Source: Octopus bimaculoides
Lineage: Eukaryota
DNA length: 64,000 nucleotides
Reading direction: 5' to 3'
NCBI RefSeq assembly: GCF_001194135.2
Contig: NC_069002.1
Location: forward strand, 36,782,057-36,846,056
A model generated the notes under the pieces. The model saw nothing but the letters and a program-made list of their open reading frames with translations, made no database searches and had not been told where the DNA came from. Made by a program: the position numbers and the translations under genes. Of the stretch, positions 9,000 through 64,000 are shown in pieces; within the stretch, counting starts at the first letter, position 1; each line of letters begins with the position of its first letter.

Positions 9000-9338
9000 T
9001 TTATCCGACATTTCGTAACGAGAATAGGAAAGAAAGAGACGACGAAGAAGAAGAACGAGGAACAATCCACGGACTCCGAGATAACAAAGATCCGGGCACT
9101 TAAGAGCGTGTGTGCGTATGTGTGTGACCTGCGCATGCGTACCTCTCACACTTACAAACGACAGTTTTCTGAGGGAGTAAACGATGGTGTCGGCTTAAAA
9201 GCGTCGCGAAAGTACCAAATGCAATCGTCAGCATCTTGGCTCAATTTGGGAAGAGGGAGGTCTGGCGGCTGCCTTAGTTGATACATTTGTCTGTTTTATT
9301 CTCCCTCTTAGAACTTTTGATGTACAGCCGCTGCCAAG
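9000..9338 (+). promoter_or_regulatory. CpG-rich promoter / non-coding first exon(s) of the CK1 gene
   Basis: About 21 CpG counted in 9001-9300 versus about 2 in 30301-30600. NRF1-like TGCGCATGCGTA at 9130-9141. Donor CAAG|GTACGC at 9338/9339 would join to the ATG exon as CCAAG|ATGG. A strong acceptor (TTTTATTCTCCCTCTTAG) at 9311 could define a 27-nt UTR exon 9312-9338. Confidence 0.65.
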
Positions 9339-10607: not shown

Positions 10608-10683
10608 ATGGAGCTCAGAGTTGGTAATAAATACCGTCTTGGTCGAAAGATAGGCAGTGGCTCTTTCGGAGATATATATTTAG
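10608..10683 (+). CDS. CSNK1D: Casein kinase 1 delta/epsilon, coding exon 1 ([26 protein letters not shown]; glycine-rich loop)
   Basis: The polypyrimidine tract and TTGCAG acceptor lie immediately before the ATG at 10608. The 76-nt exon translates to the classic CK1 delta/epsilon N-terminus with GSGSFG. Donor G|GTAAGT at 10684. Delta versus epsilon cannot be separated (likely a single invertebrate orthologue). Confidence 0.98.
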
Positions 10684-18352: not shown

Positions 18353-18530
18353 GTGAGTGAGCTAGCAGAGTTGTTAGCACACGAGACGAAATGCTTAGCT
18401 GCATTTCTTCCATCTTTGTTCTGAGTTCAGATTCCGCTGAGGTCAACTTTGCTCTTCATCCTTCTGGGGTTGATAAAATAAGTACCAGTTGTGTACTGGG
18501 GTTAATGTAATTGACTACCCCCTCGTCTTG
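18353..18530 (+). mobile_element. tRNA-derived SINE, family B (GTGAGCTAGCAGAGTTGTTAGCAC...AAGTACCAG)
   Basis: Recurrent motif with copies at about 12225-12320(-), 18160-18335, 21410-21480, 38290-38460, 42826-43030, 50790-50900 and 57820-57965. Confidence 0.8.
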
Positions 18531-20269: not shown

Positions 20270-20999
20270 NNNNNNNNNNNNNNNNNNNNNNNNNNNNNNN
20301 NNNNNNNNNNNNNNNNNNNNNNNNNNNNNNNNNNNNNNNNNNNNNNNNNNNNNNNNNNNNNNNNNNNNNNNNNNNNNNNNNNNNNNNNNNNNNNNNNNNN
20401 NNNNNNNNNNNNNNNNNNNNNNNNNNNNNNNNNNNNNNNNNNNNNNNNNNNNNNNNNNNNNNNNNNNNNNNNNNNNNNNNNNNNNNNNNNNNNNNNNNNN
20501 NNNNNNNNNNNNNNNNNNNNNNNNNNNNNNNNNNNNNNNNNNNNNNNNNNNNNNNNNNNNNNNNNNNNNNNNNNNNNNNNNNNNNNNNNNNNNNNNNNNN
20601 NNNNNNNNNNNNNNNNNNNNNNNNNNNNNNNNNNNNNNNNNNNNNNNNNNNNNNNNNNNNNNNNNNNNNNNNNNNNNNNNNNNNNNNNNNNNNNNNNNNN
20701 NNNNNNNNNNNNNNNNNNNNNNNNNNNNNNNNNNNNNNNNNNNNNNNNNNNNNNNNNNNNNNNNNNNNNNNNNNNNNNNNNNNNNNNNNNNNNNNNNNNN
20801 NNNNNNNNNNNNNNNNNNNNNNNNNNNNNNNNNNNNNNNNNNNNNNNNNNNNNNNNNNNNNNNNNNNNNNNNNNNNNNNNNNNNNNNNNNNNNNNNNNNN
20901 NNNNNNNNNNNNNNNNNNNNNNNNNNNNNNNNNNNNNNNNNNNNNNNNNNNNNNNNNNNNNNNNNNNNNNNNNNNNNNNNNNNNNNNNNNNNNNNNNNN
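20270..20999. other. Assembly gap (730 N); others at 8531-8673, 21777-21786 and 43221-43230
   Basis: Runs of N. The two large gaps abut (TA)n. Confidence 1.
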
Positions 21000-22043
21000 G
21001 AGTTAAATCTCTCTCCTGAATACTTGGGGTCGCACGAAGAAAGGTTATCAACGACAACTGTTTCCCATAATTATACATACACACGTATATATGCACACAT
21101 ATACACATTGTGTAAAATCTGTAAATTGATAAGCAATTAGTGACTAATTTGAGACGGTCAAAATACTCCCATTAATACATTTTCTTTTAATTTTTCTTTG
21201 TCAATGAGAATGTGTGATGTTCATCCGTTTCTTGTTTTATTGGTGACGTAAGTCATGAATTTTGAGATAAGCGATGGAAAAATGTTTGACACACAGCATT
21301 TAATAAGCTAGTGTGTGTATAAATATAATTTCTTATATATACACACTTACATATATCTAAATGTGTTGTGTGTTCTACATTAATTTTATAAGCTGTTGAT
21401 TTAGACATTGTTTTTACAATCATCGAGGTCGGCTTTAATTTTCATCCACCCGGGGTCGATAAAATGCACTACCTGTCAAGTAGTGAGGTCTATTCTAGCG
21501 ATTATTACTCACTTTCCCTTCATCTCTGCTCTTGTAAATTTACAGACATCATCATTATTATCCTCAACATTACATTTTGCCTCCATTGAAAGACATCTCG
21601 CGTGCATAACCACTTTGCTAGAAACAGCAGCGAATCTAACTTGACTTGCATTCCACTTTTTTTTTTGTTTTCTATTTGTGAAGGACTGAGAATAGTTTTA
21701 GTCTCAGATAAACAGAATAAAAGATTGGCTAGTCACAGCTGAATGCCTTTGATTATGTCTTCTGTGAGTCGTGTGTNNNNNNNNNNATATATGTATGTAT
21801 GTATGTATATATAGGCTAGGCGAAGGTAAATATGTCCGTGTGTGTGTGTATACACATTCAGATATTTCATTCTGGCCATGAAGTGTGTGTGTGTATGTAT
21901 TTTATTTATTAGTTGAAACTGATTCGTCACTCAAAGTGGATTACTTATAAAAGTAGTACTCAATGCAAAATTTCGAGTGTAGTGTTACATAGTGCAAAAC
22001 TATATATATATATATGTTATATTGTTATTATTTGTATATTCTC

Positions 22044-35065: not shown

Positions 35066-35176
35066 GTACTGATATATCTAATGGTGAGGAAGTGGCAATC
35101 AAATTAGAATGTGTGAAAACAAAACACCCACAGCTACACATAGAAAGCAAAATCTACAAAATGATGCAAGGTGGAG
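35066..35176 (+). CDS. CSNK1D: CK1 delta/epsilon coding exon 2 ([37 protein letters not shown]; catalytic Lys38)
   Basis: Acceptor TTTTTCTCTTAAAG, 111 nt, phase 1 to phase 1, donor G|GTAAGA. The translation matches CK1 subdomains II-III. Confidence 0.98.
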
Positions 35177-37471: not shown

Positions 37472-39128
37472 TACATTCTAACTAGCAGAATTTATCTTTG
37501 TCTTCTTGTAAGCCATTTGTGTTAACCAGAGTTTTTATTTCAAGCCTTCCCTTGCTACCCGCATCTCTATTAAACTCTGCTGTATCTGGTGCATTTACAA
37601 TTATTGTTTTCAACCAGTCTGCAAGAAATCCTAATGTATTTTTCATTAAAATTTCTTTCATTGAATACAGCACTGAGATCCTGCCAACTCTCATCTGTAT
37701 TGATTGAACAAACCTTATTGTTACAGCTATTGTTTTTTTGTTTGTTTTTCTTCTCTGGTCTCTTTTAATGATTTGTGTTAATATTTACCTGTTGTCTTTT
37801 GGAATCTATTCTGTTTGATAATACTAGAGGTAGTTACAATTAGCAAACATGTATATTGTATGTGTGCTTTTGCAAAAATATGTTTCATATGCAGCTGAAT
37901 GAAACTCAAGTCATGAGTTTGAACGCGCACGCACACACACACACACACACCTGGTCTGAAGAGGAATAATTGCCCATAGGATCCTCAAAAGCTCAAGAAA
38001 TGTGGTTTGATGCACGAGATCATTTTTCAGTGACTTAAAGATGTGAAATATTTCAATGTCTAAATTAAGCAGAATGTGAATAGTTAAGTAGCTAGTCGTA
38101 GGAAGGTCATCTAACTGTAAAATAACCACTCCAATTATATTTTTGGTTATTATGATTTTTGGTAATACTTATGAAATTTGCCTATTATTACCTCAGTTGA
38201 TTTCCTTTTTACTATTGTGAAGTGAAAGAGAAGTCATGTCACAAAATTAATGCTGAAATTATCTGTTGCTCCATAGTAAAAGGTTTCAATCCTTGGTCAT
38301 GTCTTTAGTAGTTCTAGAATCTGAACTTTACAGTCATTGCTTTTCATCCTTTCAGGGTCGATAAATTAAGTACCAGTTGTGTACTGGGCTCAATCTAATC
38401 AACTGGCCCTCTCCCCCAAAATTTCAGGCCTAGTGCTTAGAGTAGAAAAGATTATTATTGTTGTTGTTGTTATTATTTCTTTTGGCTAAATTAATATTGG
38501 AACAATGAACCTTGTCTAATACTTCAACCTTGCGTCTATTCTGCCTGTACCTGAGTCAAGTATTTCTCTATAATGTTTATGAATTTTTATGATTATTTTA
38601 GATGCTATTGTCTTTATATTAGTATAAATCTTGTTTCATATCTTAGCAATATTGAAATTTCATATCAAATGTTCTGTTAGAACTTTAACTCCATATTTAT
38701 TTTGAATTGCATTTCTTTTTTAGACCTATCTAGTTGTGTCAGCAGTTTTGAAATAGTATTATGTCAGTTGTTTTTTTTAATTTTTAATAGATAAATGAAA
38801 TGTTCAAGTGTAACAGCTTGAGATATACTACATTTTAATATATATTTAATGTTGCTTAATGATTATTTCCAAGTTGCTTGGAATAGTTCAGATTTTAAAG
38901 TTTTAGATGAATGGTAATCTATACATTAAAATCAACACGGTTTAATTGTCTTCTCTGCTTAATATTAAATGTACCAATTATATTTTTTGTAAGTTGAAGT
39001 CCATATAGCAGAAGTGAGCTAAAACATTAAAATTTAGTGCACAACAGAGTTCAAGGTCAGTCTGTTAAACACTGATGGTGATAGGGTTTTATTTGTTCTT
39101 TTTTTCTTTTCTTTTTTTTTTCAATATA

Positions 39129-39992
39129 TGTGGTCTGATCAATAAGTATCTGGACTGTTGCTATAGTAACGAAGCTAAAGCACGCAGAGTGAAGCTGCTT
39201 GGCACAGACTGACCTTGAACTCTGTTGTGCATGTGCACTAAATTTTACTGTTTTAGCTCACTTCTGCTGTTTATTAGCAGTGCTTGGAAGGAAAGTGTGT
39301 AGTATGTAATTGTCACATTGACCATGACACAAAAAGTTGAGTAGAGAATCTGCATCAAATTTTGCCAAAAGCTTGGCGATACCTGCTCAGAGACCTTTGC
39401 AAGTTTTAAAAAAGTTTTCATCGTTCTCAACACGATCAAGGAAATCTTGTGCCACTGAAACCTGAGTGTCTTTTTGGTCAGCTGAAAGCAGTTTTGGCAG
39501 ACATGTATCTCATATCCAAGCCTCCAGAGATAATGGACTGAACTGAACCGTAGCTAATCTGCACACCCTCTGATAACTCGTGGATGGGGATTTGACAATT
39601 TCTCCTCACAGCTGCATGCATATCTGATGTTTTTCAGTTCTGCTGGTTGTGGGTCTCCCAGAAAATTTGTCATTATCGACATTTTTTTCAGCCATCTTGG
39701 AAACATCTGAACCACTCATACACTTGTGTGTGGTTCATACACTTTCTGCAACTTTGCATAGGCCTCTGAGCAGGTATTGCCATGACAACTTTCTCTGTCA
39801 TGGTCAGTGTGATGATCACCCGCTACACACCTTCCTTCCAAGCACTGCTGTAAATAGCCGAAGTGAGCTAGAACATTAAAACTTAATGCGCATGCACTGC
39901 AGAGTTCAAGGTCAATCTGTGCCAAGTGGTTTCACTCTGCGTGCTTCAGTTTCGTTATGGCAACAGTCTGGATACTTATTGATAAGACCTCG
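39129..39992. mobile_element. Non-autonomous mariner (Tc1/mariner) made of two inverted 5' ends
   Basis: TA target duplication (39127-39128, 39993-39994) and long TIRs (consensus CGAGGTCTGATCAATAAGTATC...). The + strand encodes a decayed MTQKVE*RICIKFCQKLGDTCSET. The - strand encodes YEWFRCFQDG...FSGRPTTS and ends at DRVENDENFF, before the catalytic D. Confidence 0.9.
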
Positions 39993-42900
39993 TATTATCA
40001 TGTAATTAGCTATGTTGTCATCATTTCTATAATAAAATCTTTTATAATTGTACTTTTACTTCCTGATCAGTGATAAACTATTAAGCATTTTATTCTATTT
40101 TTAAACAATTGACACACTCTGCTTCAGATATTTCTAAATCTTAGAAACAGATCTTTGTTATAAGAATATAAATTTCTGTTATTATTTTCAGTGTGTCTGA
40201 TTCTGGATTTTTTTATTTTTTTATGTTGCAATAAAACATACTAGTTGTACTGATCCATTAGTCATCAGCTGTTTAGTCAGCTAGTCTATGAAATACAGTC
40301 CTGTAAAACTTGTTTGTTATGCTAAGCATCAGTACTTGCTACCACTTTCACTGCAATGGATTTGTCATCTGAAACCGGGATAATCTTCCTCTTGTTCAAT
40401 CTATACACTTCAGTTATGGCTTTGTTCACAGTTCAGGGTTATTGAGGTTGTTAGATATGTAATTGTGTAGTTTAACGTAGCAATGATTCCAACAGATTTT
40501 ATCATTGCCCGTTTCTCCTTGTTTTATTTTCCTTTTGATAAAAAATTTGGATTTGAAGGAGATCTGGCTGCTATTTCTTGCAGGTTGAATGCTATGTTTG
40601 CAGTATATGCATAAGTTACTAAAAGTTTTGACATAATTTCAGTTAGATATTGCACTGTTTCTGTTGGTGAAACAAAGGTTGACTATCAATTACTGTTTAA
40701 AAATTTTAGTGATTTGTTTGATTTAAAAAAAAATTTTTTATCTTCCAACATATTGTGTAAGTTTACTCTTGTCAAGAGTCCATTTGATTCATTTTGTTTA
40801 TTTATGGACTAAAGTTATAAAATGAACAAAGCAGATGTTTTAGAACAGTAGTTAACACTCACTGACCAGTGAAATTAGAAGTAGGTGTGATAGTTGTTTA
40901 CAATTGAAAGGTTTTATGCACCATAAGGGCACACATAGTACAATGTCTGTTGGTAGGATTCTTGTTCAGAAGTCCAGTACTTTTTTAACAGTGAACCAAT
41001 ATAACATTTATTTTAAATAGACCATATTTTATCTGTATATTTATTATTTGAAAGGTCACAAGGTCAGAGATCAATACTCTCAATGTTGTCATAAAGTAAT
41101 TCAATGTAAAATAAGGATTTTGATGTCAATTTTTTTTTTAGATGTCTAAAATTAAATTATTTTTATTACCTTCAAAATTCAAAAGTAAAATGGAAAAGAT
41201 TTATCATTTTTTTGCTATTTTTTTTTTAATTAAGCCTTGTTTGTTTGTTAATTTTTTTTTATTATCAAACCTTTTTATTTATCTATTTCATTTAAGCTGA
41301 TTTTTGTACCAACTAGACTAAAGTTAATAAGGGTAAATGGTGGAACTAATCTTGATCAACTTGAAAATTATTAATGATGATTTGACATAAGGTTGATGAG
41401 CAGATGATTACAGGAGTCTAATGAAACTCAGGATAGTGTCACTCTATTCATGAATAAACTGCAGCCCATGGGAGTTTTTGAATGGCATGCCTAATGAAAA
41501 ATTATCTTCACTTTTTTTAGTAGTGCAACATGCCTGATGATGGAGTCATGTCTCCTGTGATCCACTTCTGAAAAAAGGTTGCCTATTGTTCTGACCAAAC
41601 TTCACAATAAAACAACCATGTCCACACAAAGTACTGTTGATGTTGTGAAGCCCCAGGTCAATTCTATGATTGAAGGCTTTCCAACTGTTACCATTCGGTT
41701 AGATTTCCAAAGTAATTCAACCAGGACTACATTATTCACTGTGTCTTCAAGAAAGTAGAGTGTGATTTGAGAGACATTCTAGCAGCTTGAGTTGCTGTAT
41801 AGTCTTCTTTGTGGGTTTGGCAAAACACTTTTATAGTTCAATTAATTAATAACTTGTTCAACGAAGAAAAGGCTCTCTTAATGTTGTTTCATACATGATG
41901 GTCCCTCATAAACTACCCCACAAATATTAGATTATTGGGGGAGGTAGTCTATGAAAAACGTGGGTTATTGAATGCAAACAAAAATGTTATTGTCAGGCCA
42001 TCACTGATTTGTTGACCAACAGCTCGTTAATCATTGCTAACCAGATTACAAATGGAAGGTTTTGTAGCTTTGTTCATCCATTTATTCCACTTAATGTCTG
42101 TTTTTTTCCGTGGCCTTAGATGGGAGGTAATGAAAACAGTATTTTGACAGCTGGATGCTTTTCTGGTTGCCAACCCTTACCTGTTTTTCAAGCTATGGGA
42201 GTTGTTTTTTATTCCCAAGAAACTCGATAACACAGAACTAGCAGACAGGAAACGTCAATGACCATCAGCTCAGCCACAAATAGTGACGTCACTAATTGTG
42301 GCCATAGTGCAGCATAGTTTATTAACCTTTGCACACACACAGCTTCTTTCAGTTTCTGTCTACCAAATGCCTTTATTAAGCATTGGATGGCCTGGGGTTT
42401 TAGTGGAGGGCACTTTGTTGTAGGTGCTGCAAAGTGAGACTGACCCCGGAGCCACATTGTTGAGAAGCAAACTTCTTAATCACACGGCCCTGCCTGTATC
42501 CTCATACAAGAACTGAATATTGGTTATGAAAATTTTGTTTTGTATTTGGTTTGCAAGATTCTTTATGTGAATTTGTGTGTCCACTTTCCCCAGACATAGT
42601 AAAAGATTATGAAAATATTTATTTATCAAATATGAATTAAATTGATGTTTTACTTCCTTGTAATAAAAGATTTGTTAAAGTAGTTTTGATACAAAGAATT
42701 TGGAAAACAAAAATTGTAAATTGTTTGAAAACCAAGCAATAAATCTGTTTAATTTTGACTCTGATTACATCATTTACTTGTGTGACAATTGTGAATTATT
42801 TTATTATATAGTCATACCTAAGGTAGCAGCCTGGCAGAGCTGTTAGCATGCTGGACGAAATGCCAAGTAGCATTTCTTCCAGCTTTTTGTTCTGAGTTCA

Positions 42901-43254
42901 AATTTTGCTGTGGTTGAGTTTGTCTTTTATCCTTTCGGGGTCAATAAAATGTGAAATATTGGTGTTGATGTAATTCACTCCCCCACAATCCCAGCCCTCA
43001 ACTTTCAGACCTTGTGCCTATATCAGAAACAATTATACAGACATATGTGATTGATTCTAGCAGAGGCTCTAAATATATATTTTGTAATTCTAAAAACTAT
43101 ATAGTTTTTGTCTTTGATAATTGATTTTATTGTAAAAAGTTCTCAAACTGAATTGGAGTATTAAATTTATTTATTTTTTTTATGTCAGAATTTTAAATGT
43201 AAAGACATTGTTTTGAACTTNNNNNNNNNNTTTTTTTTTTTTAACTATTTTCAG

Positions 43255-43403
43255 TAGGAATTCCCACAATCAAATGGGGTGGTGCTGAAGGCGATTACAA
43301 TGTCATGGTCATGGAGCTTCTTGGTCCCAGTCTTGAAGATCTATTTAATTTCTGTTCAAGAAAATTCAGTCCAAAAACTGTGCTTTTGCTTGCAGATCAG
43401 TTG
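43255..43403 (+). CDS. CSNK1D: CK1 delta/epsilon coding exon 3 ([50 protein letters not shown])
   Basis: Acceptor TATTTTCAG, 149 nt, donor TTG|GTAAGA. Contains the CK1 signature [10 protein letters not shown] and gatekeeper Met82. Confidence 0.97.
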
Positions 43404-47153: not shown

Positions 47154-47382
47154 ATAAGTCGGATTGAGTACATTCATTCAAAGAATTTCATCCATCGAGA
47201 TGTCAAACCAGATAATTTTCTCATGGGATTAGGGAAAAAGGGAAATTTAGTATATATTATTGACTTTGGACTTGCTAAAAAGTACAGGGATCCAAGGTCT
47301 CACCAACATATTTCTTATCGAGAAAATAAAAACTTAACTGGCACAGCAAGATATGCTAGTATAAACACACATTTAGGAATAG
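47154..47382 (+). CDS. CSNK1D: CK1 delta/epsilon coding exon 4 ([25 protein letters not shown]...[10 protein letters not shown]...[16 protein letters not shown])
   Basis: Acceptor TTTCTAACTTCAG, 229 nt, donor G|GTAAGT. Contains HRD, DFG and the CK1-specific SIN motif. Confidence 0.98.
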
Positions 47383-48991: not shown

Positions 48992-49162
48992 AGCAAAGTA
49001 GACGAGATGACATGGAATCATTAGGATATGTTTTCATGTATTTTTTGAGAGGAAGCTTGCCATGGCAGGGATTGAAAGCAGCAACCAAACGACAAAAATA
49101 TGAAAGAATTAGTGAAAAGAAAATGTCAACACCTATTGAAGAGCTTTGTAAAGGATTTCCTT
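48992..49162 (+). CDS. CSNK1D: CK1 delta/epsilon coding exon 5 ([57 protein letters not shown])
   Basis: Acceptor ATTTTCAG, 171 nt, donor T|GTTAGT. Matches ORF-track entry 48973..49167. Confidence 0.98.
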
Positions 49163-51334: not shown

Positions 51335-51483
51335 CGGAATTTGCAACATACTTAAATTTCTGTCGGTCCTTACGGTTTGACGATAAACCAGATTATTCCT
51401 ATTTGAGGCAGCTATTTAGAAATCTCTTCCATCGTCAAGGATTTACTTATGATTATGTCTTTGACTGGAACTTGCTAAAATTT
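51335..51483 (+). CDS. CSNK1D: CK1 delta/epsilon coding exon 6 ([50 protein letters not shown]; end of kinase domain)
   Basis: Long T-tract plus TTTACAG acceptor, 149 nt, donor TTT|GTAAGT. Confidence 0.98.
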
Positions 51484-52027: not shown

Positions 52028-52169
52028 GGAGGTAGGTCAAATGATGATTTTGATAGAGATCGCAAAATGTACAGCTCGACAGCTAGAGGATTACAAGGTA
52101 CGACCACTGCTGGCCGTATGCGATCTGATCAAGTAGCTGTTGCAGCCTCCCCCAGTGGCGATTATGGCA
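52028..52169 (+). CDS. CSNK1D: CK1 delta/epsilon coding exon 7, start of the regulatory tail (GGRSNDDFDRDRKMYSSTARGLQGTTTAGRMRSDQVAVAASPSGDYG)
   Basis: Acceptor TTCCATTGACTTGCAG (phase 0), 142 nt, donor A|GTAAGT (phase 1). ARGLQGTTTAGRMR resembles TRGLPSTASGRLR in the vertebrate CK1 delta tail as I recall it. Confidence 0.9.
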
Positions 52170-53858: not shown

Positions 53859-54139
53859 AATTGCAGCATGGAAGGTGTTTATAAGCCATTTAAGAAACAC
53901 ACAAAAACCGTTAGATTCACTTCAACATTTAAATTTAATTTGTCAAAATATTTTCGTCGCTTTGAGACCGCGACCTGTTCACTGACAAAATTCTGTGCAG
54001 CACAGAATTTTGTAAGTGAACAGGTCGCGGTCTCAAAGCAACATAAATATTTTGGCAAATTAAATTTATATGTTGAAGTGAATCTAACGGTTTTTGTGTG
54101 TTTCTTAAATGGCTTATAAACACCTTCCATGCTGCAATT
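53859..54139. repeat. 281-bp near-perfect palindrome (140-bp arms, 1-nt loop at 53999, 6 mismatches), probable MITE/foldback element
   Basis: Arms compared base by base. The ORF track shows nearly identical peptides on both strands (53868..54119 + and 53879..54157 -). Abuts (TA)n. Confidence 0.9.
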
Positions 54140-55959
54140 GTTTTCGTTCCAGCACACGATCTCAGATTAGGTCACTTGCTATGCAAATACATCTCTGTAA
54201 TATATATATTCATTCATTTATTAGAAGCCAAGCTTCTAAGATAGGAAAACGTCTCCATCATCATGTTCCTCAATGCAAACATGATGATATTTGGAACAGT
54301 GGCAAGCAAACCTCAGCATCAAAAAAATTAATAATCTTTTAGGTTGTGGATACCTTTTCTTTCTCTTCTTTGTACTCATATACACACACTTAGTAGTACA
54401 CTTAACTCATGGCACTTACAAATATATTTATGGGAGTTAAACAAACACTGATGAGAACTAACCAACATCCAAAACTGTAGTAAGTCTGGTAGCTGCTTCA
54501 TGCTGCCAACAGCATATTAACTGGAATTCATTTTGTAGCAAGATAACCTATGCTCCTTTGTATCATTGTAACATATTTTTTATGCTGTGTTGGTGCATCC
54601 ATAAATTCTAAGCAGTTATCAAACTGACACCATTTTTGTGCAAATGGTATATTTTTTCAACAAAACTTGGTGCTACAATGGCAGTTTGAGTAGTCACCGA
54701 AATTCTGACAAGAAATATTATAATTTTTGTACTATTTAAAAAAAAAAATTTTAATAGCACTTTCATGGAAGTTTGTTTGAGCATTTATATATCCTTTTAT
54801 ATATGAATGTATCCTAGTTACATATTGGCTATGTGACAGTATGGTATGGTTTGATGACCTGCTTATCTGTGTGTGCATGTATACACAGTATTTATATTGA
54901 TATCAGGGTGTATTTATACAGAAATACATATTTGTGTTTATATCTGTGTATACATATTTATGTGCATATACACACATGTATGAGCTCGTATATCCAATGC
55001 ACATGGATTCGTGTATATATATCTATGTGTATGTGCACACACACACATACATAAAACCAGCACATGTATGAAATAAAATTGATAACAGTAATAAACATAA
55101 TGTTTAATAAAAACATTTAGCCTCAGTGTGAAAAAGAGACTTTATGGTTATACAATAGGTCTTTCATCCACCTGTGAAAAAGGTCAAGGCAAAAGAATCA
55201 ATTAATTTTACCTTTCATTATTAGAGTTATCATCTGTATTCAGTTATTTCCTTCTGTTTACTGAGAAGACTTAGTTAAAGACTGATACATCTAATCTTAA
55301 CAAAGCTAGGTCTGACTTTATCTCTACAGCAATTGCAGAGTTAGCTGTGCATATTAAGGGGAGCATTGACACTGAACATACGAGATCAAAACTGTAAAAA
55401 AAGGTGATCATGTTTCATAAGCATATTTCTAGCACCACTAGGAATACAGAACCCCTGCGGTTAAACAATAGCCTTCGCATATTTGCTGTTGGTGCTGTAG
55501 TAGAACACAGCCAACTTTTCACTGTTACTATGGCCCTTGGATGTTTATTAGAACCGTCCAATGTATTCTAAGCCTTTGCACCAGTTCTCCAGTCTGAGGA
55601 TGACTTCTCACAAGTTACACAGCCCCCCACCCTCAAAGTGTCATACGTAGGAGCTCCACTTCTGACTACAGACATGAAAAAGTGACGCAAGTGTCTGGTC
55701 GAAGCTGATAATACATTTATCGTAAAGTCGACGTTAACCTCATCACATGTGATATAGTGCTTGCTATACCTCAATTGAAATTGGCTTCAATGGAAGCTGA
55801 AACTCATCCAGTGACTCAACTATTTCTCTCTGGCTGCTGAAAAACCTGTTTGACTGCAGTTTCTATTTTCACAATATGACTAAATATGTTTGCAAAGTTT
55901 GCAAAACATAATAATCTATATATATATATATATACACATATATATATATACACATATAA

Positions 55960-56093
55960 TATTAATATTTAATGGAAGCAACAGAGTAACTCAAGGTCTG
56001 AGAGTTTCGTATGCCGGTACTTATTTTGATAAGTGCCAATGCACAAAACTCTCAAAGCTTGAATCGGTCTGTTGCTCCCACTGAATATCAATA
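55960..56093. repeat. Older 134-bp hairpin element (65-bp arms, ~74% identity, TTTG loop)
   Basis: 17 of 65 positions differ, many compatible with G-U pairing. Near-mirror ORFs appear in the track. Abuts (TA)n. Confidence 0.75.
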
Positions 56094-57459
56094 AAAATAA
56101 ACATGTCCTTTTACTTGTTTCAGTTATTTGACTGCGGCCATGCTGGAGCACTGCCTTTAGTCGAGCAAATCTACCCAGGACTTATTCTTTGTAAGCCTAG
56201 TACTTATTCTATCGGTTTCTTTTGGCGAGCCGCTAGGTTATGGGCACGTAAACATACCAGCATTGGTTGTCAAGCAATGGTGGGGGGACAAACACAGACA
56301 CAAATGCACGCACACATGTGTATATATATGACAAGCTTCTTTCAGTTTCCATCTACCAAATGCACTCACAAGGCTTTGGTCGGCCCGAGGCTATAATAGA
56401 AGACACTCACCTAAGGTGCCACACAGTAGGACTGAACCTGGAACCATGTAGTTGGGAAGCAAGCTACTTACCACACAGCCACCCCTGCGCCTATTGTTCA
56501 TATTTTGAGTTCTGTTTTTCCTGCTTGCATCACTGCAGGTGCGGCTGTCTGGTAAGAAGCTTGCTTCCCAACCACCTGGTTCTGGGTTCAGCCCCACCGT
56601 GTGGCACCTTGGGCAAGTGTCTTCCTTCATAGCCTCAGGCCAACCAAAGCCTTGTAGGTGGTTTTGGTAGACAGCCCTTTGAGGCAGTACTCCAGCATGG
56701 CCACAGTCAAATGACTGAAATAAGTTAAAGAATAATAAATATATATATATATATGGGAGAGAGATCTGTTCTTCAACAGTGAGTATACCATTAGCATGTG
56801 CACTCCTAACATAATCTTCAGGCATAACCAGTATGATGCAGGGTTGATGCATGCAATTTGAGTTACAGGTACAGTCCTGATGGGATTCCACACACTTTCT
56901 GTTGACCCAGTTTCACTCATGAGGCTTGGGTCAACCCAAGGTTATGATAAAAGACACCCTAGATGCCATCCTCTAGAATCGAGTCCAATGCATCATTATT
57001 ATTATTATTGTGAAGCAAATTTCTTAATCATTTGGTTAGGGTTGTGTGTGTGTGTGTATAAACCTGGAACTTGATTCTGAGGTTTGCAGATTAACTTATA
57101 ACTTATTTTGAATTGTCATTTACCTTCTACAGCTTATTGAAAGTTTTACAAATATTATACTAATGGTTGATCTAAATTACCTCTCTGTCACTTGTGGTTA
57201 TAATCACTACATATCTTTGTAATTTCTCTTTTTAATGTTATGCATCAACCTTTGGCTCTCCTTGGTGGTATAATGCTACCTTTTAACCAATATTGATGAT
57301 ATCACAGGAACATAAAGCTGAAAGAATTTAGTCTCTGCATCTCCCCTCGTACTTCCTTGTTGAGCACTTGTTTCACTTTTATATAAGGATGGTTGATTGC
57401 CAATATGTTCTTATCTTTGTTGCCTGAGATATTGTTAAAAATTTTTGTATTTTGTACAG

Positions 57460-57490
57460 TTCTACGACGGACAGATCTCTTATTTAAAAA
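57460..57490 (+). CDS. Candidate 31-nt alternative microexon of the CK1 tail (I-LRRTDLLFK-)
   Basis: Acceptor TTTTTGTATTTTGTACAG and donor AA|GTATGT. Open in the phase-1 frame left by exon 7. Retains CpGs in a CpG-depleted neighbourhood. No transcript evidence. Confidence 0.5.
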
Positions 57491-58298
57491 GTATGTATTG
57501 TATATTCCTTTAAGGGCTGTAATACCATCTCACTTTAAACACTTTGTTATTTATATGTTATGTAATGAAGAAGACAGTTATCAATTAAATTACAAATTGG
57601 CTCTTTAGTCTGCTATGTAAACTCAAATAGTCAGAACTAGAACTAGTTCTAAGAAGGTTGAAAATGAAAGAAAATGTTTAGTTATATCACATTTATGAAT
57701 AAATGAGATTTCGCTATGGAATCTGTAAATTAGAGAATGGTTCCTATTGAGAATAACAATCAATCATGTTAAGAAACCCACAATAAATATTGTACATTAA
57801 TATAATTGCATTGTAAGTTGCTGAGCTGGTAGAATCGTTAGCACACTCGGTGAAATGCTTAGTAGCATTTCATATGTCTTTACGTTTCTGAGTTCAAATT
57901 CCGCTGGGGTCAAATTTGTCTTTCATCCTTTCAGGGTCAATAGAAATAAGTACCAGCTAAGCACTGAGGAGTATTGTCTGCATATAAGATAAACAGCCAA
58001 GCAGCTACAATTTCTTTTACTTCATTAGGACTGACTTGTGGACCGATCCTCAACTACTAATGTAAATAATTGTGCTTAATATTTAATTAGAACTTCTACA
58101 ATACTAAACACTAAACAATACCAAGTCATGACATAGTCAACTGCAGACTAGGAGAATGTGTTGACTATTGTTTATTATAATTACATTCAGTGTCAGTCAA
58201 TCTGATAATAATCCTCATATTTAAGTAACCAATTAGAATAGAATATTTACCTGCCTTTTCTTTTTTTTCTTCCTTCTTCTTTTTACATTTGTTACCAG

Positions 58299-58303
58299 TT
58301 TAG
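58299..58303 (+). CDS. Candidate 5-nt microexon TTTAG (or a recursive splice site at 58303/58304)
   Basis: A ~45-nt polypyrimidine tract plus GTTACCAG, then TTTAG, then donor GTAAGA. 31+5 = 36 nt restores phase 1. Confidence 0.4.
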
Positions 58304-60082
58304 GTAAGATTTTGTTGCTTTTTTTTTAAACCTCAATCTGAGAAATTAAAAAAAGAAAGGAATTAGCAGTATTTCCACTCATCTTTGCTTTTACCCTTTA
58401 AACATATATAAAATATGTACCAGTAAGGTACTAGGGTTGATCTGAACAACTGTACCCTTAAAGGCAGTGCTCCAGTATGGCCAAACTCCAAGGCTGAAAC
58501 GAATAGAAGAATTTAAAAAAAAAGAACTTTTTTTTTGCGCTTTGTTTTCAGTTTCAATTTTTTGCTTTTTTAATTAATTTTAGTATTGAAATTGTTGTTC
58601 TCCTCTGCTTCCTCATAAATCTTTATATTTTTGGCAATATGCTTCTTTTGTCTTTTTTATCATTTACATTGATTGGGTTTTTTTTTTGTTTTTTATTAGA
58701 GACAAACATGTTGGTACTTTAGGGTTGTTCGTTTTGAAATATATATATAATCAGTGTAATTGGAAATGAAAGTATGATCCATTTTGTTGTCATAGCAGTG
58801 TGCTTGTGTTTGTGTAGATTTATGTTGTGTGGTACAAAATAATTGGATTTCAGGGGAATTTAATGCTATTTACATTGAATTTTTAATCTTTAATATATAA
58901 ATTCTGTATATCTGCAAAAGAGGTTTCTCTGCAAATTTCTATTCAGTCAACTAATTTGGTTACCAAAAAACAAGAACCAACATTAACTTCTTTGAAAATA
59001 TGGAGGTAATCTTGTATCACAAATAATGACTGAATTGATAAAGCTGATAAAATAGCTGTGTTGTAAAGTACAATTTAGAGAATTGAATTTCAGAAAAGAT
59101 CTGTTTTTGTTGGATGTCTTAAGAGTATGCAAACCAAGTGCCATGAATTCCAAACCAGTTTTCTGGATCCCCCCATTGATTTTATACTCTAGGTTTCTTT
59201 AATAATTTGAAACATTGAAGTGGTAAATGCTTTTAGTATTGAAATCTTTCTGGAGAAATTTTTGTGTCTCCAATCTAACGACAACACTTTCGGTATTTAT
59301 TCACTTCATCCCCTTATCATATTAATGAGGGTGAGAGTTTGCATGTGTGAGGAACATCACTTTCTTGATTAGTATGGAAGGGTTTACATTTGAAGAACAG
59401 ACCATCACGTCTTGTTACATAATATATACATACGTGTGTGTATGTATTAATGTATATATGTGTGTGTGTGTAAATATGCCAGTGATGTGTAAAAGACACC
59501 CAGTACACTATGTAGAGTGATTGGTGTTGGGAAGGACATCCAGTTGAGGAAACCAAACCAAACCAAAACAGACTGGAGCCTGGTGTAGCTCTCTGGCTTA
59601 TCAGCCCCAGTCAAACCATCTTACCTATGCCACCATAGAAAACAGACTCTACATCATGATGATGTATGTGTGTGTATGTATGTATACACACACAAATACT
59701 CCCTTTATATACACTCATTTTATCATTTGCAATCAAAGTACCAAAAGAGAAGGCAAGTTTTAACGACTATAATCAAGTTGAAATTTCAAATGAAGTAAAG
59801 TCTCACATAATTTATAGGGTAGAGTTGTAAACATTCAGAAATATTGAGATAATTTGTACATTTTTAATTGAAAATTTTTATTCACTTTAATTTGTAAACA
59901 TTTTCTTCTGTTGCTTTATTTATTCTAAATCAATCTCATTATAAAGCCAATAAAAATTGTTTTTTTTTTTCTTTTTAATTTTTACTTTTTTCTATTTGTA
60001 CCTTCTGTGACGATTCTCTCTCTTCCTTCTTTTGTTTCTCTTCTCTCTTTTTTTCTCTCTCTCTCTTTCTTGGGATGTTAAG

Positions 60083-60105
60083 GTTTGACATGTCTTGTTA
60101 TTTAG
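60083..60105 (+). CDS. Candidate terminal exon A: (G/S)LTCLVI-stop
   Basis: First AG (60081-60082) after a 134-nt AG-free, pyrimidine-rich zone. The phase-1 frame gives TTG ACA TGT CTT GTT ATT TAG. AATAAA at 60438. Confidence 0.3.
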
Positions 60106-61080
60106 TGCCAATGAGTAAATTAATTTGTTGCTAGCATGGTGCTTGGCATTTTAAGCTTCTAGGAACATTGCTTAGACTCTTTGTTTTCAGGGAAATGGTA
60201 GAGGAGACACTCTATACATTTAAACCTTTTGCATGCTGCAATTAATTTCAGCAACAGCATGACTATGGTTTTAAAATCTTGCTTCTATTAATTCAATCTA
60301 TCTTCCATTGCATTAGTGTCACTAGGCATGAGACTCCTCCTACCAAAATAGCATTCTATTAGTAATCATTATTTAAAATGATCTACATTAGACTTAATAC
60401 GGAACAAATAAGATAGCAAGTTTGTTTTTCTTTTACAAATAAAATAAAAATTTAGTTTTCCAAATCAATTATTATTATCATTATTATTATTATTAAATTC
60501 ACAGTTTATAAGTAGTTATTAGTTAATCTCTTATCAGTTGTTGGAATTGTTTGCCTTGTTATTAATAGCTAGAACTGAAGATAATTTGACAGCCATTACA
60601 AAACTAACCGGCTTATCTGGGAATATTGGCAGATAAGCAAATGTGGGGCAGTTTCCAGAGGTTGTGATTCTAGGTTCTAAGCTTCTTGTTATTTGCATGA
60701 TAAATAAGAGCAGCACTTCATCTACTTGAGGTTGGTCACCGTTCCTTGCTGTTTGGCAACATGTTGTTATGAAAGTCGGGCTACAAGTAGTAAGAACTAA
60801 AGCAATCTTGGAGAACAGAATTCAAGTTAACTCAAGATCATTTACATCACTCTTTTTCATACTTTTCTTTTTCTTTTGTATCATTCTATCATCATTCATC
60901 TTTTACCACCATGCTAGCAACATGACTTACATTTCATAAGAAATAATGGTTAATTAGGAGATTGTATTTATAAATTTATTTTTTTTAAATGTTTCTATGT
61001 AAAAAAAAAAAAATTTCCTTTCTTTCTCCTCTCTATTTCTTCAACTCTTCAATGTACATCTATTTTACATCCTTGTACAG

Positions 61081-61115
61081 TCAGGAGTGGGGACAGATAT
61101 AATCTGGTTGTCTGA
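61081..61115 (+). CDS. Candidate terminal exon B: (V/I)RSGDRYNLVV-stop
   Basis: A ~60-nt polypyrimidine tract ends CCTTGTACAG at 61080. The phase-1 frame is open to TGA at 61113-61115. AATAAA at 61219 and 61223. Confidence 0.35.
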
Positions 61116-63930
61116 CCTAATAATGTAATGCGAACATGGAACCAGTCAATGTTAAAATGATAAGGATTTTGGCTGTTCTTTTACCCTGCATTTCAAAATG
61201 AAACAGAATGAATTTAAAAATAAATAAATATGAATTTATATGAGAACATTCACGTACAATATCTTGGGTATTTCTTCCAGCCATGGCCACCCCACTTTCT
61301 TTTTCTAGCATGTTATACCCTCAGCTACATTATCTAGTTTGTTCTTTTTGAAAGATACTAAGATGTGATTTGGCTGTTATTTTTAACAGATTGAACAACC
61401 AATTGCAACTTCCTTCTTGTCTTGATACCAAAATTTCAAATATGTGTGACAACAGTCGTATCAAAACGGTCAGTGGAAAACGGTCGGCAATGCTGGGTAA
61501 GAGACTGACTATTGGTCTCCTGCTTCAGAGTTTCATTAGCACTCATTTGGTATCAGACCAGTGAGGAAGCTGACTATTGGTTGCCTTAGTATCTTTACAA
61601 AAGAACACTGTGGATACATGATGCTCGGAAAACGATAGGGTGGCCATGACTGGAATGCTTTTATTGAAGGGTTAGTTGTTCAGGGTTAATCTGAGATTAC
61701 ATATTTGGTATCAAGCTTAATGCATACACCCAAATCACCACTGATTGACTACCAGGACTCTTACTCACAAACTTCCTACCCAACTAATCTTCTAAATAGA
61801 TCAGATTATAATGAAGGAGCCTTTATATGATTGCTTTACTTACTAGAAATAGCAACCAAATCTGTCAAACCATTTTTCTCATTTTCAGCAGGGGAAAGGC
61901 CATTGGTTAATGTAATCTAGATTCCTGGAAAGAAAATTGGGAGGGTGGTGAATATAGCCATAGCTGGAACATTTCTGAAGTTTTCTGGATCAGACTAAAC
62001 CTAAAACTAAACAATATTTGGGAGTGTTTTTAAATGGGTTCTAAAATCTAAATGAAAATCAAGCTTTTTTTTAAAAAATGCCTGCAGTACTGAAAATTAT
62101 CTCCGAAGTATGTCACTGTAAAACAATCTTTTGAGGTGATGTGTGTGTATTTCAGTACAGTTTTTTTTTATACCACACTCATATTAGTTCAATTACCAGT
62201 GTTATATTAATTTGATTACGTGTGTGTGTGTGTGTGTGTGAAGGTGCATGGTTTAGTGGTTAAGGTGTTGAACTTGCGTTTGCGAGATTGTGGGTTCGAT
62301 TCCCAGACAGGGTGTTGCATTGTGTTCTTGAGCAAAACACTTCATTTCATGTTGCTCTGCAATCATTTCGACATCTGACACCCGTTGCACCTGTACAGGT
62401 AATGTCAATCTGGTGGAGGGAGTGAGCTTATGTCTACACAAACATTTGATCACTATAAACAAATCATCTGTGTGGTTGTTTGGTAAGAAATTGTCAAACC
62501 CTCATATGTCCATTATTATTATTATTATTATTATTATAATTATTATTATTATTATTATTATATAAATACATTGTGATATTTCAGTTTCTCTTGCTATTTC
62601 ATCAGGATAGGATGCCTTCTTTCTTAAGATCAATACGATATTCTTTCATATTTTCCTTGGACTACTGCTGACCTCATTAAACTTTTACTACTTCTACTGT
62701 ACTTCCACTATCTCTGGGAGGTATATAGGCACAGTGATTTCAATTTTAGTGTGTTGGGCTGCTGATCACAGGCCACAAGTTCAAAACTGACTAAAACCAC
62801 TTATTTGTACCTCTAGTTTGTCCACATAATTTCAGTATGTTGTTTACAACTTCCAATCATAGATTCTCAAACCTTTTAATTTTGTATTCCAGTCTTAGAT
62901 ATTTGATAGTTAAGCTAGTTTGCATTTCTTTATATTTTGGAGGAGTGCATTCTGTCTGAAATTTAGAAATGCAAACAAAAAGCTCATGATAAACTATTAG
63001 TTGATATAACTGATAGTCTAACAAATGAAATAATTGTAATAATCTTCCTAAAATATCATACAAAACCACTAGTTATGAGGTGTTTATATTTTAATTAAAA
63101 CCATCCATTATAATTTGAAGAACTTTTTATAAAGTTGTGTTCCATATACAAGCTTAATAATGGGACAGGTCAGCTGTTTGACTAAATCCTTAAAAATTCT
63201 TGATTTTTTTCAAAATTCATGGATGCACATTTTATTCTATTAGAAATCTAGTCATGAAAAGGTTAAAAATTATCATGGGCATTTTTTTTTCTTTTTCTTC
63301 TTTTGTATCTGATTTTCAGCGTTATTCAGTTTGCTAGACATATCAAGTTGGATGGGGTAAAATTATGATTAATATAACACAAAGGAGAAGTGGGTGAATT
63401 GAGATAATATTTATATAAGGCTTGGCTCAGTTGCAGGCTATCTTTCAGTCAACTAATGCTTTTAGTTCAAGTTTGAACAACATTTGCATATTGTTAGAAT
63501 TGTCTTCATAACAGGATGTCTTTTCATTGCTGGTCATTTAGCCATAAAACCCACGGTCAGACAAGTTATCTAATGATATTGAATTAGTTGGTCGAATCTA
63601 GCATCACATGATACCTTTTGCTTTAAAAGGGGAAAAACTTTATAATATGGGAAAACGATAGTCGATACACAGTAGGATGAAATGTCGGAGTCATAATCTG
63701 TGTGTAAAGATTGATTCTTCATTGATAGCCATTATGTAATGAAGAAAGAACAGTGGTTGAAGTTGTGAAGAAAATATTTATTTACTGTTACATTGAATAT
63801 ACCTTGCCTCGACGGGCAGGTGATAAAATCCTAGAGCGTGCGAAGTAAAAAAAAGTTAATTTTGGCCTGTGTGTTCATATTGTAGTAGTAAACCATAGAG
63901 AGAGATATGTACATATATATATATGTAGAA

Positions 63931-63973
<43 letters not shown>

Positions 63974-64000
63974 TATCTCTCTCTCTCTATCTCTCTATCT

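What the first reader, a model, noticed from the sequence alone, without database searches (positions are those of the whole stretch)
57460..58303. Frame-preserving pair of microexons (31 nt + 5 nt) adding ILRRTDLLFKNL to the CK1 tail
Seen: both segments have strong acceptors and donors. Exon 7 ends in phase 1 (A). The 31-nt exon gives A|TT CTA CGA CGG ACA GAT CTC TTA TTT AAA AA, and the 5-nt exon completes AA|T TTA G, returning to phase 1 with no stop. Either alone shifts the frame, so they would be obligately co-included or would switch the C-terminus. Established: tail splice variants tune CK1 delta activity on PER, and microexons are typically neural-regulated. Inference: a previously unannotated modular switch in a cephalopod clock kinase.
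Basis: partly seen in the sequence, partly recalled or inferred. Interest (0 to 1): 0.75.

Follow-up and report, generated by a model that had tools for sequence, protein, structure and literature searches.

The report
Octopus CK1 alternative exon; 5-nt partner unsupported
The 31-base segment is a real alternative exon in the tail of an octopus casein kinase 1 gene, already annotated in two sister octopus species. The proposed 5-base partner exon has no support, and the partners annotated in the sister species lie beyond the end of the window.

Summary
The window is Octopus bimaculoides chromosome sequence carrying exons 1-7 of the CK1 delta/epsilon orthologue. The sequence facts in the finding are correct. 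Exon 7 (52028-52169) ends in phase 1. A 31-nt open segment (57460-57490) lies between cag and gtatgt. TTTAG (58299-58303) lies between ccag and gtaaga.

The 31-nt segment is orthologous to an exon already used in Octopus sinensis RefSeq models. In isoform X1 it is followed by a 62-nt cassette and tail exon A (31+62 = 93 nt, an in-frame insertion of 31 residues). In isoform X5 it is spliced straight to tail exon B, giving a frameshifted 19-residue tail. An O. vulgaris model carries the same 31+62 insert.

Nothing supports the 5-nt exon. Comparable acceptor-plus-donor composites occur about once per 58 kb, antisense strands included. No 31+5 product exists in the protein collection. The site is unrecognisable in Argonauta.

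The 31-nt exon itself evolves like intron (3 of 31 substitutions, 2 non-synonymous) and is undetectable in Argonauta. The 62-nt cassette is 60/62 identical there. Verdict: an ordinary, already-annotated alternative exon plus a probable chance motif.

The parts
10608..10683 (+). CK1 exon 1 (start codon, [26 protein letters not shown]; ends in phase 1)
   Evidence: tblastn with a CK1 delta sequence recalled from memory. Boundaries and translation. Identical to the N-terminus of O. bimaculoides XP_014777672.
35066..35176 (+). CK1 exon 2
43255..43403 (+). CK1 exon 3
47154..47382 (+). CK1 exon 4
48992..49162 (+). CK1 exon 5 (donor gttagt)
51335..51483 (+). CK1 exon 6 (end of the kinase domain, ...DWNLLKF)
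52028..52169 (+). CK1 exon 7 (proximal tail GGRSNDDF...SPSGDYG; ends in phase 1 with A)
   Evidence: Conserved in O. sinensis and Argonauta. Present in transcript L003.
57460..57490 (+). 31-nt alternative cassette exon (A|TT CTA CGA CGG ACA GAT CTC TTA TTT AAA AA; takes phase 1 to phase 2)
   Evidence: Orthologous to O. sinensis L001 70117-70147, with AG/GT conserved. That exon is used in O. sinensis X1 and X5 and in an O. vulgaris model. Single-copy, not a repeat.
58299..58303 (+). TTTAG between ccag and gtaaga: the proposed 5-nt microexon. Most likely a chance juxtaposition of splice-like signals. It can also be read as a recursive-splice-site-like motif, tttag|gtaaga.
   Evidence: Sequence. 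Chance frequency. Identical in O. sinensis, but the neighbourhood is about 92% identical anyway. No homologue in Argonauta. No 31+5 product in the collection.
60070..60180 (+). Deeply conserved intronic element downstream of a CU-rich tract of about 100 nt. It includes a 38-nt block (60070-60107) identical in Argonauta. Possibly an unannotated exon (60083-60114, 32 nt) or a splicing regulatory element.
   Evidence: Negative follow-up (no products; no Rfam family; fold z = -0.22).

Best explanation
The window holds exons 1-7 of the Octopus bimaculoides CK1 delta/epsilon orthologue and the first 11.8 kb of the long region that follows exon 7.

The segment 57460-57490 is a weak-site, 31-nt alternative cassette exon. 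Because 31 is not a multiple of 3, its effect depends on the next exon used, and all candidate next exons lie beyond the window end:
- (a) The 62-nt cassette, then tail exon A. 31+62 = 93 nt, so the frame is kept. 31 residues are added net (32 residues, ILRRTDLLFKKFQVEKKILSLLDKKKTETLLL, replace one Met) in front of the conserved SGTRPGTREREKRSSSRLHRG tail.
- (b) Tail exon B directly. The frame shifts and the protein ends after ILRRTDLLFKKFSWSSSTV (361 aa).

The TTTAG at 58299-58303 is not an exon. It is most probably an intronic chance juxtaposition of a good 3' splice signal and a good 5' splice signal.

Shown: exon orthology, conserved splice sites, the arithmetic, and open frames in both contexts in both species. 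Inferred: that O. bimaculoides actually includes the exon, and that inclusion changes kinase regulation by altering the autoinhibitory tail.
For: - The window is O. bimaculoides CM046622.1; window coordinate minus 607 equals L007 coordinate.
- O. sinensis X1 (P0124, XP_029649503-5) reads ...GDYG-ILPQTDLLFKK-FQVEKKILSLLDKKKTETLLL-SGTRPG.... It is reproduced exactly by splicing L001 exon 7 + 70117-70147 + 88105-88166 + 96779 onward.
- The product I predicted for exon 7 + 31 nt + tail B in O. sinensis exists verbatim as isoform X5, XP_029649508.1.
- O. vulgaris CAI9738738.1 carries the same insert.
- The window and O. sinensis align colinearly. The exon and both its splice sites are retained.
- In O. 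bimaculoides, tail B starts at L007 65291, the 62-nt cassette is 70724-70785 and tail A starts at 79000. All are past the window end, which is L007 63393.
- All O. bimaculoides products are open as described.
- For the 5-nt site: comparable composites occur on antisense strands too. No 31+5 protein of either species is in the roughly 15-billion-protein collection. There is no Argonauta counterpart.
Against: - I have no RNA-seq junction reads for O. bimaculoides.
- The only octopus transcript contig I could fetch (L003, SRR3401912) skips the 31-nt exon and goes exon 7, 62-nt cassette, tail A.
- No O. bimaculoides protein with the exon is in the collection.
- RefSeq and short-read aligners are nearly blind to 5-nt exons, so its absence from annotation is weak evidence against it.
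- The 5-nt site combines good signals with frame restoration at p of about 0.03-0.05, which is not negligible.
- The O. vulgaris model may not be independent of the O. sinensis proteins.
Confidence: 0.8

Rival explanations
1. The 31-nt and 5-nt segments are co-included microexons. Together they add 36 nt, inserting 12 residues net (ILRRTDLLFKNL plus a changed junction residue) in frame before either tail.
For: - The arithmetic holds, and both 31+5+tail A (432 aa) and 31+5+tail B (440 aa) are open.
- The 5-nt site has a 0.80 Y tract, a CAG acceptor and a GTAAGA donor.
- It is one of only two strict frame-restoring candidates in 57491-64000.
- A partner this small appears in only 5% of shuffles.
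- The site is identical in O. sinensis.
- Annotation pipelines usually miss exons this small (my own knowledge).
Against: - The sister-species models use other partners for the same exon: the 62-nt cassette or tail B.
- No 31+5 product of either species is in the collection.
- Equally good composites occur on antisense strands, about 1 per 58 kb.
- Identity with O. sinensis is uninformative: the 101-nt window sits at the 53rd percentile of the intron.
- There is no Argonauta homologue.
- There is no UGC within 46 nt of the acceptor.
- Exons of 5 nt are very rare (my own knowledge).
Confidence: 0.04
2. The motif at 58303/58304 (pyrimidine tract, ...ccagtttag|gtaaga) is a recursive splice site. 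It would let the long region after exon 7 be removed in two steps and would leave no trace in the mRNA.
For: [quoted passage not shown]
- It is the only AG|GTRAG with >=70% pyrimidines upstream on the + strand of the 64-kb window, against none on the - strand.
- The intron is long: 13.7 kb to tail B and 27.4 kb to tail A.
Against: - One such motif also occurs on an antisense strand of L001.
- It is not detectable in Argonauta, whereas fly recursive sites show twice the conservation of control AGGT motifs (PMC6110457).
- I know of no report of recursive splicing in cephalopods, and I did not search the literature for one.
- There are no nascent-RNA or lariat data.
Confidence: 0.08
3. The 31-nt exon is young, low-inclusion splicing noise that annotation pipelines captured. 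It is spliced but has no selected function. This rival concerns function and overlaps with the best explanation on structure.
For: - It differs at 3 of 31 positions between O. bimaculoides and O. sinensis, 2 of them non-synonymous (RR versus PQ). That is no better than the surrounding intron, which is 88% identical overall with flanks at 93-97%.
- It is undetectable in Argonauta, while exon 7, the 62-nt cassette and both tail exons are easily found there.
- It has the weakest splice signals in the gene.
- It is absent from the one octopus transcript fetched.
- In squid the cassette has a stop in the frame that a 3n+1 upstream exon would open.
Against: - Both splice sites and both open reading contexts are retained in two species.
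- The exon appears in two different O. sinensis models and in three X1 protein accessions.
- The two cassette substitutions in Argonauta are synonymous or conservative (K to R) in the frame that the 31-nt exon opens.
Confidence: 0.35
4. The in-window partner of the 31-nt exon is the deeply conserved element at 60083-60114 (32 nt). 31+32 = 63 nt, which would add 21 residues in frame (ILRRTDLLFKKFDMSCYLVPM).
For: - A 38-nt block overlapping it is 100% identical in Argonauta.
- A CU-rich tract of about 100 nt lies upstream. The flanks are aag| and |gtaaat.
- The frame is restored and stays open into both tails.
Against: - No such product is in the collection.
- It is not used in any O. sinensis, O. 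bimaculoides or Argonauta model seen.
- The acceptor AAG is 13 nt from the end of the tract.
- The conserved block ends 7 nt before the putative donor; those last 7 nt carry two substitutions in Argonauta.
- The 31-nt exon it would pair with is not found in Argonauta. The element's conservation therefore cannot be explained by that pairing.
Confidence: 0.06

Closest known systems
Octopus sinensis casein kinase I isoforms X1 (XP_029649503-5, 451 aa) and X5 (XP_029649508.1, 361 aa), and O. vulgaris CAI9738738.1
   Same: Same gene, same exon at the syntenic position, same AG/GT boundaries and same phase. The O. bimaculoides sequence stays open in both splice contexts.
   Different: 28 of 31 nt are identical, and the peptide is ILRRTDLLFK rather than ILPQTDLLFK. 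No O. bimaculoides model with this exon was found in the collection.
Vertebrate CK1 delta1/delta2 splice variants (extreme C-terminus switch)
   Same: Alternative splicing changes the disordered, autoinhibitory C-terminal tail of a CK1 delta-type kinase while leaving the kinase domain untouched. In mammals this changes activity on PER2 and circadian period (PMC11474029).
   Different: [quoted passage not shown] Here the choice point is right after residue 342. It selects between two whole tails (A, 78 aa; B, 86 aa), a truncated tail (8 or 19 aa) or a 31-aa insertion. There is no sequence homology between the variable parts, and no functional data in any mollusc.
Neural microexons (3-27 nt, SRRM4/nSR100-dependent)
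   Same: Short exons in a signalling protein. The 5-nt candidate falls in the size class.
   Different: The 31-nt exon is longer than the usual limit. Neither segment is a multiple of 3. There is no deep conservation, whereas neural microexons are reported as more conserved than other neural exons (bioRxiv 10.64898/2026.09.05.749416). The nearest upstream UGC is at -39 and -47. The size limit and the UGC feature come from my own knowledge.
Recursive splice sites of long introns (Drosophila and human)
   Same: [quoted passage not shown]
   Different: No intermediates, lariats or sawtooth data. Not conserved to Argonauta. I know of no description of recursive splicing in cephalopods, and I did not search for one.

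Membership tests
Orthologue of the annotated O. sinensis alternative exon (X1/X5) | Syntenic position between exon 7 and tail exon B | tested here: met
   Colinear blastn: window 54200-61445 aligns to L001 66924-74111. The exon lies 5.3 kb after exon 7 in the window and 5.5 kb after it in O. sinensis.
Orthologue of the annotated O. sinensis alternative exon (X1/X5) | Same AG...GT boundaries and same length and phase | tested here: met
   cag|31 nt|gtatgt in both species.
Orthologue of the annotated O. sinensis alternative exon (X1/X5) | Open reading frame in the annotated splice contexts | tested here: met
   O. bimaculoides 7-31-62-A gives 451 aa and 7-31-B gives 361 aa.
Orthologue of the annotated O. 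sinensis alternative exon (X1/X5) | Transcript evidence in O. bimaculoides | not testable with these tools
   Raw RNA-seq cannot be searched here. The exact-sequence look-ups found no O. bimaculoides product with the exon.
Neural (SRRM4-type) microexon | Length 3-27 nt | tested here: not met
   31 nt for the supported exon. The 5-nt candidate meets the limit but is unsupported as an exon. The limit itself is from my own knowledge.
Neural (SRRM4-type) microexon | Frame-preserving on its own (multiple of 3) | tested here: not met
   31 and 5 both shift the frame.
Neural (SRRM4-type) microexon | UGC motif close upstream of the 3' splice site | tested here: inconclusive
   A single TGC at -39 (31-nt exon) and at -47 (5-nt site), with none nearer. 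The expected distance range is from my own knowledge.
Neural (SRRM4-type) microexon | High cross-species conservation of the exon and its upstream flank | tested here: not met
   Smith-Waterman scores against the Argonauta intron equal the shuffled-query null. The Octopus-Octopus comparison has no power.
Neural (SRRM4-type) microexon | Neural-enriched inclusion | not testable with these tools
   No tissue RNA-seq access.
Vertebrate-type CK1 delta1/delta2 tail switch | [quoted passage not shown] | tested here: not met
   Here the divergence starts at residue 343 of 420-451. The definition is from PMC11474029.
Vertebrate-type CK1 delta1/delta2 tail switch | Isoform-specific autoinhibition or PER phosphorylation | not testable with these tools
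   Needs biochemistry.
Recursive splice site | Juxtaposed 3'ss/5'ss motif around AG/GT with an upstream pyrimidine tract | tested here: met
   ttcttctttttacatttgttaccagtttag|gtaagat, 79% Y in -30..-3. It is the only such site on the + strand of the window.
Recursive splice site | Elevated conservation relative to control AGGT sites | tested here: not met
   53rd percentile against O. sinensis. No Argonauta homologue.
Recursive splice site | Ratchet junction reads, lariats or a sawtooth profile | not testable with these tools
   No nascent or total RNA data.

The most novel reading that the evidence does not exclude
The 5-nt TTTAG really is spliced in, obligately together with the 31-nt exon. 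That would be a frame-compensating pair including one of the smallest animal exons known, acting as a lineage-specific (genus Octopus) switch in the CK1 tail alongside the annotated 31+62 and 31-to-tail-B routes. A milder variant: the 31-nt exon is a selected 'frame corrector' for the deeply conserved 62-nt tail-truncating cassette, giving a three-state tail (long, long +31 aa, short).
Probability: 0.04. Interest if true: 0.55.

Novelty: already known. Interest (0 to 1): 0.15.

Why it matters
As it stands, the result is mainly corrective.

- The exon is real, but it is already modelled in O. sinensis and O. vulgaris.
- Its annotated partners lie outside the window.
- It behaves like a young, weakly constrained exon.

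The useful by-product is a clear map of tail isoforms of the octopus CK1 delta/epsilon gene:
- tail A;
- tail B;
- a truncated tail via the 62-nt cassette, which is conserved in coleoids;
- a 31-aa insertion via 31+62;
- a 19-aa frameshifted tail via 31 to B.

It also suggests that the O. bimaculoides annotation probably lacks two isoforms that its sister species has.

Tried and rejected
1. The first protein search, with the 97-aa exon 6-7 peptide, returned only short fragments and no cephalopod full-length protein. The full-length query solved this.
2. The third protein search, with the insert peptide, returned only 2 hits, neither carrying the 31-nt exon peptide. The representative-library search returned one irrelevant 983-aa protein. 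Neither gives evidence for or against.
3. The first alignment attempt used a string absent from O. sinensis. It was redone.
4. My guess that 31 nt + tail B gives an immediate stop was wrong. The real reading is KFSWSSS(S/T)V*.
5. The first O. bimaculoides 31-to-B look-up used the O. sinensis residue. It was repeated correctly and is still absent.
6. The look-up of P0244 for a locus returned 'not on record'. P0125 gave the O. bimaculoides locus instead.
7. The O. bimaculoides versus O. sinensis identity profile cannot discriminate. Even the Argonauta-conserved element is only at the 74th percentile.
8. I considered that the 31-nt exon might be exonised repeat sequence. It is single-copy in the window. 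The nearby SINE-like element at 57822-57969 does not overlap it.
9. I considered that the gastropod-like short tail NRKTDLKQRKF* (L006) might be homologous to ILRRTDLLFKKF. The nucleotide similarity is limited to an A/T-rich GACAGAT...TTTAAAA string, and the insert there looks more like the 62-nt cassette. This is unresolved and was not relied on.
10. I tested the conserved element at 60.1 kb as a structured RNA or miRNA. There was no Rfam hit and the fold z-score was -0.22.

Full report
**What is in the window.** A tblastn with a CK1 delta sequence recalled from memory places six kinase-domain exons on the + strand. Splice-site inspection gives seven exons: 10608-10683, 35066-35176, 43255-43403, 47154-47382, 48992-49162, 51335-51483 and 52028-52169. 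Together they encode 342 residues ending ...SPSGDYG plus one base, A, so exon 7 ends in phase 1. The window is identical to Octopus bimaculoides chromosome CM046622.1 (GCA_001194135.2). Window coordinate minus 607 equals the coordinate in locus L007.

**Checking the observation.**
- 57460-57490 is a 31-nt segment between ...tttgtacag and gtatgt.
- 58299-58303 is TTTAG between ...gttaccag and gtaaga.
- Splicing exon 7 + 31 + 5 gives ILRRTDLLFKNL, returns to phase 1 and has no stop.
- The claim of 'strong' signals holds for the 5-nt site (0.80 pyrimidines, TAG|gtaaga).
- It does not hold for the 31-nt exon. Its acceptor tract (0.55) and donor (AAA|gtatgt) are the weakest in the gene.

**The 31-nt exon is real and already annotated in sister species.** A search with the full-length conceptual protein returned O. 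sinensis casein kinase I isoform X1 (P0124, 451 aa). It reads ...GDYG-ILPQTDLLFKK-FQVEKKILSLLDKKKTETLLL-SGTRPGTREREKRSS.... I fetched the O. sinensis locus (L001). It is colinear with the window at 86-90% identity.
- The orthologous 31-nt exon is at L001 70117-70147, with the same cag| and |gtatgt boundaries.
- Splicing L001 exon 7 + 70117-70147 + 88105-88166 (62 nt) + 96779 onward reproduces X1 exactly.
- I then predicted the product of exon 7 + 31 nt + tail-B exon in O. sinensis...ILPQTDLLFKKFSWSSSSV, 361 aa. That exact sequence is in the collection as isoform X5, XP_029649508.1.
- O. vulgaris CAI9738738.1 has the same 31+62 insert.

So the exon is used in two splice contexts in annotated models. 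RefSeq models of this kind are, to my knowledge, built from transcript evidence, but I could not inspect that evidence.

**Where the real partners are.** In O. bimaculoides, tail-B exon starts at L007 65291, the 62-nt cassette is 70724-70785 and tail-A exon starts at 79000. These are 1.9, 7.3 and 15.6 kb beyond the window end. Conceptual products in O. bimaculoides:

| Exons after exon 7 | Length | Outcome |
|---|---|---|
| A | 420 aa | tail A (annotated X2) |
| B | 428 aa | tail B (annotated X1) |
| 62, A | 350 aa | NFRLKKKY* (annotated X3, XP_014777676.1) |
| 31, 62, A | 451 aa | in frame, +31 residues |
| 31, B | 361 aa | frameshift, ILRRTDLLFKKFSWSSSTV* |
| 31, A | 367 aa | frameshift |
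| 31, 5, A or B | 432 or 440 aa | in frame |

None of the O. bimaculoides products containing the 31-nt exon is in the collection, and no 31+5 product of either species is either.

**The 5-nt candidate.**
- With strict criteria, only two frame-restoring open partners exist in 57491-64000. TTTAG is one of them.
- A partner of <=8 nt arises in 5% of dinucleotide shuffles. Shuffling destroys natural pyrimidine tracts, so this is an underestimate.
- In real sequence, composites of a good acceptor, <=12 nt and GTRAG occur 8 times in about 463 kb of strand, half of them on antisense strands. That is about one per 58 kb.
- The site is identical in O. sinensis, but its neighbourhood is about 92% identical anyway. 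Its 101-nt window sits at the 53rd percentile of the intron.
- In Argonauta hians (L002), neither the 5-nt site nor the 31-nt exon has a counterpart. Smith-Waterman scores equal the shuffled-query null.

Absence from annotation is weak evidence, because such tiny exons are routinely missed. I therefore put the probability that TTTAG is a real exon at about 4%, not zero. A second reading of the same bases is a recursive-splice-site-like motif, tttag|gtaaga. It is the only AG|GTRAG with a pyrimidine-rich upstream region on the + strand of the window, and the motif definition comes from PMC6110457. It remains possible at about 8%, but it is also unconserved and untested.

**How constrained is the 31-nt exon?**
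- Between the two Octopus species it has 3 substitutions in 31 nt, 2 of them non-synonymous (RR versus PQ). Its flanks are 93-97% identical and the intron overall is 88% identical.
- It is undetectable in Argonauta. Exon 7, tail A, tail B and the 62-nt cassette are found there easily.
- The cassette is 60/62 identical in Argonauta. Squid transcripts carry a 65-nt homologue.
- The one octopus transcript contig I could fetch (L003, SRR3401912) goes exon 7, 62-nt cassette, tail A and skips the 31-nt exon.
- In squid, the frame that a 3n+1 upstream exon would open contains a stop within the cassette. The in-frame 31+62 reading therefore looks specific to the octopod lineage at most.

The simplest reading is a young, weak alternative exon in genus Octopus. 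Whether it has a selected role is open, for example rescuing the frame of the conserved truncating cassette.

**Mechanism (inferred).** In mammals the CK1 delta tail is a disordered, autophosphorylated, autoinhibitory segment. Splice variants that change only its last 16 residues alter activity on PER2 and circadian period (PMC11474029). By analogy:
- The octopus choices after residue 342 would set the degree or kind of autoinhibition.
- Routes through the 31-nt exon either insert a lysine- and leucine-rich 31-residue block before the conserved SGTRPGTREREKRSSSRLHRG motif, or remove the tail altogether.
- This is analogy, not homology. The variable parts are unrelated in sequence and position, and nothing has been tested in a mollusc.

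**Comparison and verdict.** The finding is partly right. There is a real alternative exon that can switch the C-terminus. The headline is wrong on three counts: a 31+5 microexon pair, a 12-residue insert, and 'previously unannotated'. Neither segment fits the neural-microexon class on length, frame, conservation or nearby UGC. What is there is already known from sister-species annotation, so interest is low.

Noticed in passing
window 60070-60180 (core 60070-60107); Argonauta L002 about 39050-39160; O. sinensis L001 about 72680-72790: A deeply conserved intronic element with a 38-nt block (TTGGGATGTTAAGGTTTGACATGTCTTGTTATTTAGTG) identical between Octopus and Argonauta. It sits just downstream of a CU-rich tract of about 100 nt. 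It could be an unannotated exon: 32 nt at 60083-60114 (alone gives SLTCLVI*, with the 31-nt exon gives an in-frame 21 aa), or 9 nt at 60106-60114. It could also be a splicing regulatory element. No matching protein in the collection, no Rfam family and no significant fold.
   Followed up: partly
outside the window: L007 70724-70785 (O. bimaculoides), L001 88105-88166, L002 53066-53127; transcripts L003, L004, L005: A 62-nt cassette between tail-B and tail-A exons is 60/62 identical in Argonauta, and squid transcripts carry a 65-nt homologue. Spliced directly after exon 7 it truncates CK1 to about 350-359 aa (NFRLKKKY* in octopus, NFRSKKKKLKFARNGED* in squid). This is a tail-less isoform conserved across coleoids. 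One squid contig (L004) has 17 extra nt after the cassette.
   Followed up: partly
L006 (JGI metatranscriptome 3300018978 contig, gastropod-like CK1): This contig also has an insert between the exon-7 equivalent and the tail-A equivalent, ending the protein early (…ADFNRKTDLKQRKF*). Short-tail CK1 isoforms made by an insert at this junction may therefore be widespread in molluscs. Homology of the insert to the cephalopod cassette is unresolved.
   Followed up: partly
proteins P0125, P0130, P0132, P0136, P0139, P0146, P0247: Two alternative full-length tails are each conserved across molluscan classes. Tail A is ...SRERE(K/R)R(S/T)S.RLHRG...RHLRK-like. Tail B is ...RGLP/Q..KD(K/R)LPTRLSLATR...K(H/Q)RP-like. 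The A/B alternative-terminal-exon choice therefore looks ancient in molluscs.
   Followed up: no
window 53918-54080 (arms extend to about 53880-54140): A near-perfect long inverted repeat (hairpin) that matches the plant MIR6140 model on both strands, well below its gathering score. It looks like a foldback or MITE-type element rather than a miRNA gene.
   Followed up: no
window 57822-57969; copies at about 18358-18501, 42831-42949, 38342-38376, 12262-12318(-): A SINE-like dispersed repeat lies between the 31-nt exon and the 5-nt site. It does not overlap either.
   Followed up: partly
window 9174-9338: The 5' end of transcript contig L003 maps here and then continues into the coding exon that starts at 10608. 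This suggests a non-coding first exon about 1.3 kb upstream of the start-codon exon.
   Followed up: no
window 8531-8673, 20270-20999, 21777-21786, 43221-43230: Runs of N (assembly gaps). The last one ends 25 nt upstream of exon 3.
   Followed up: no
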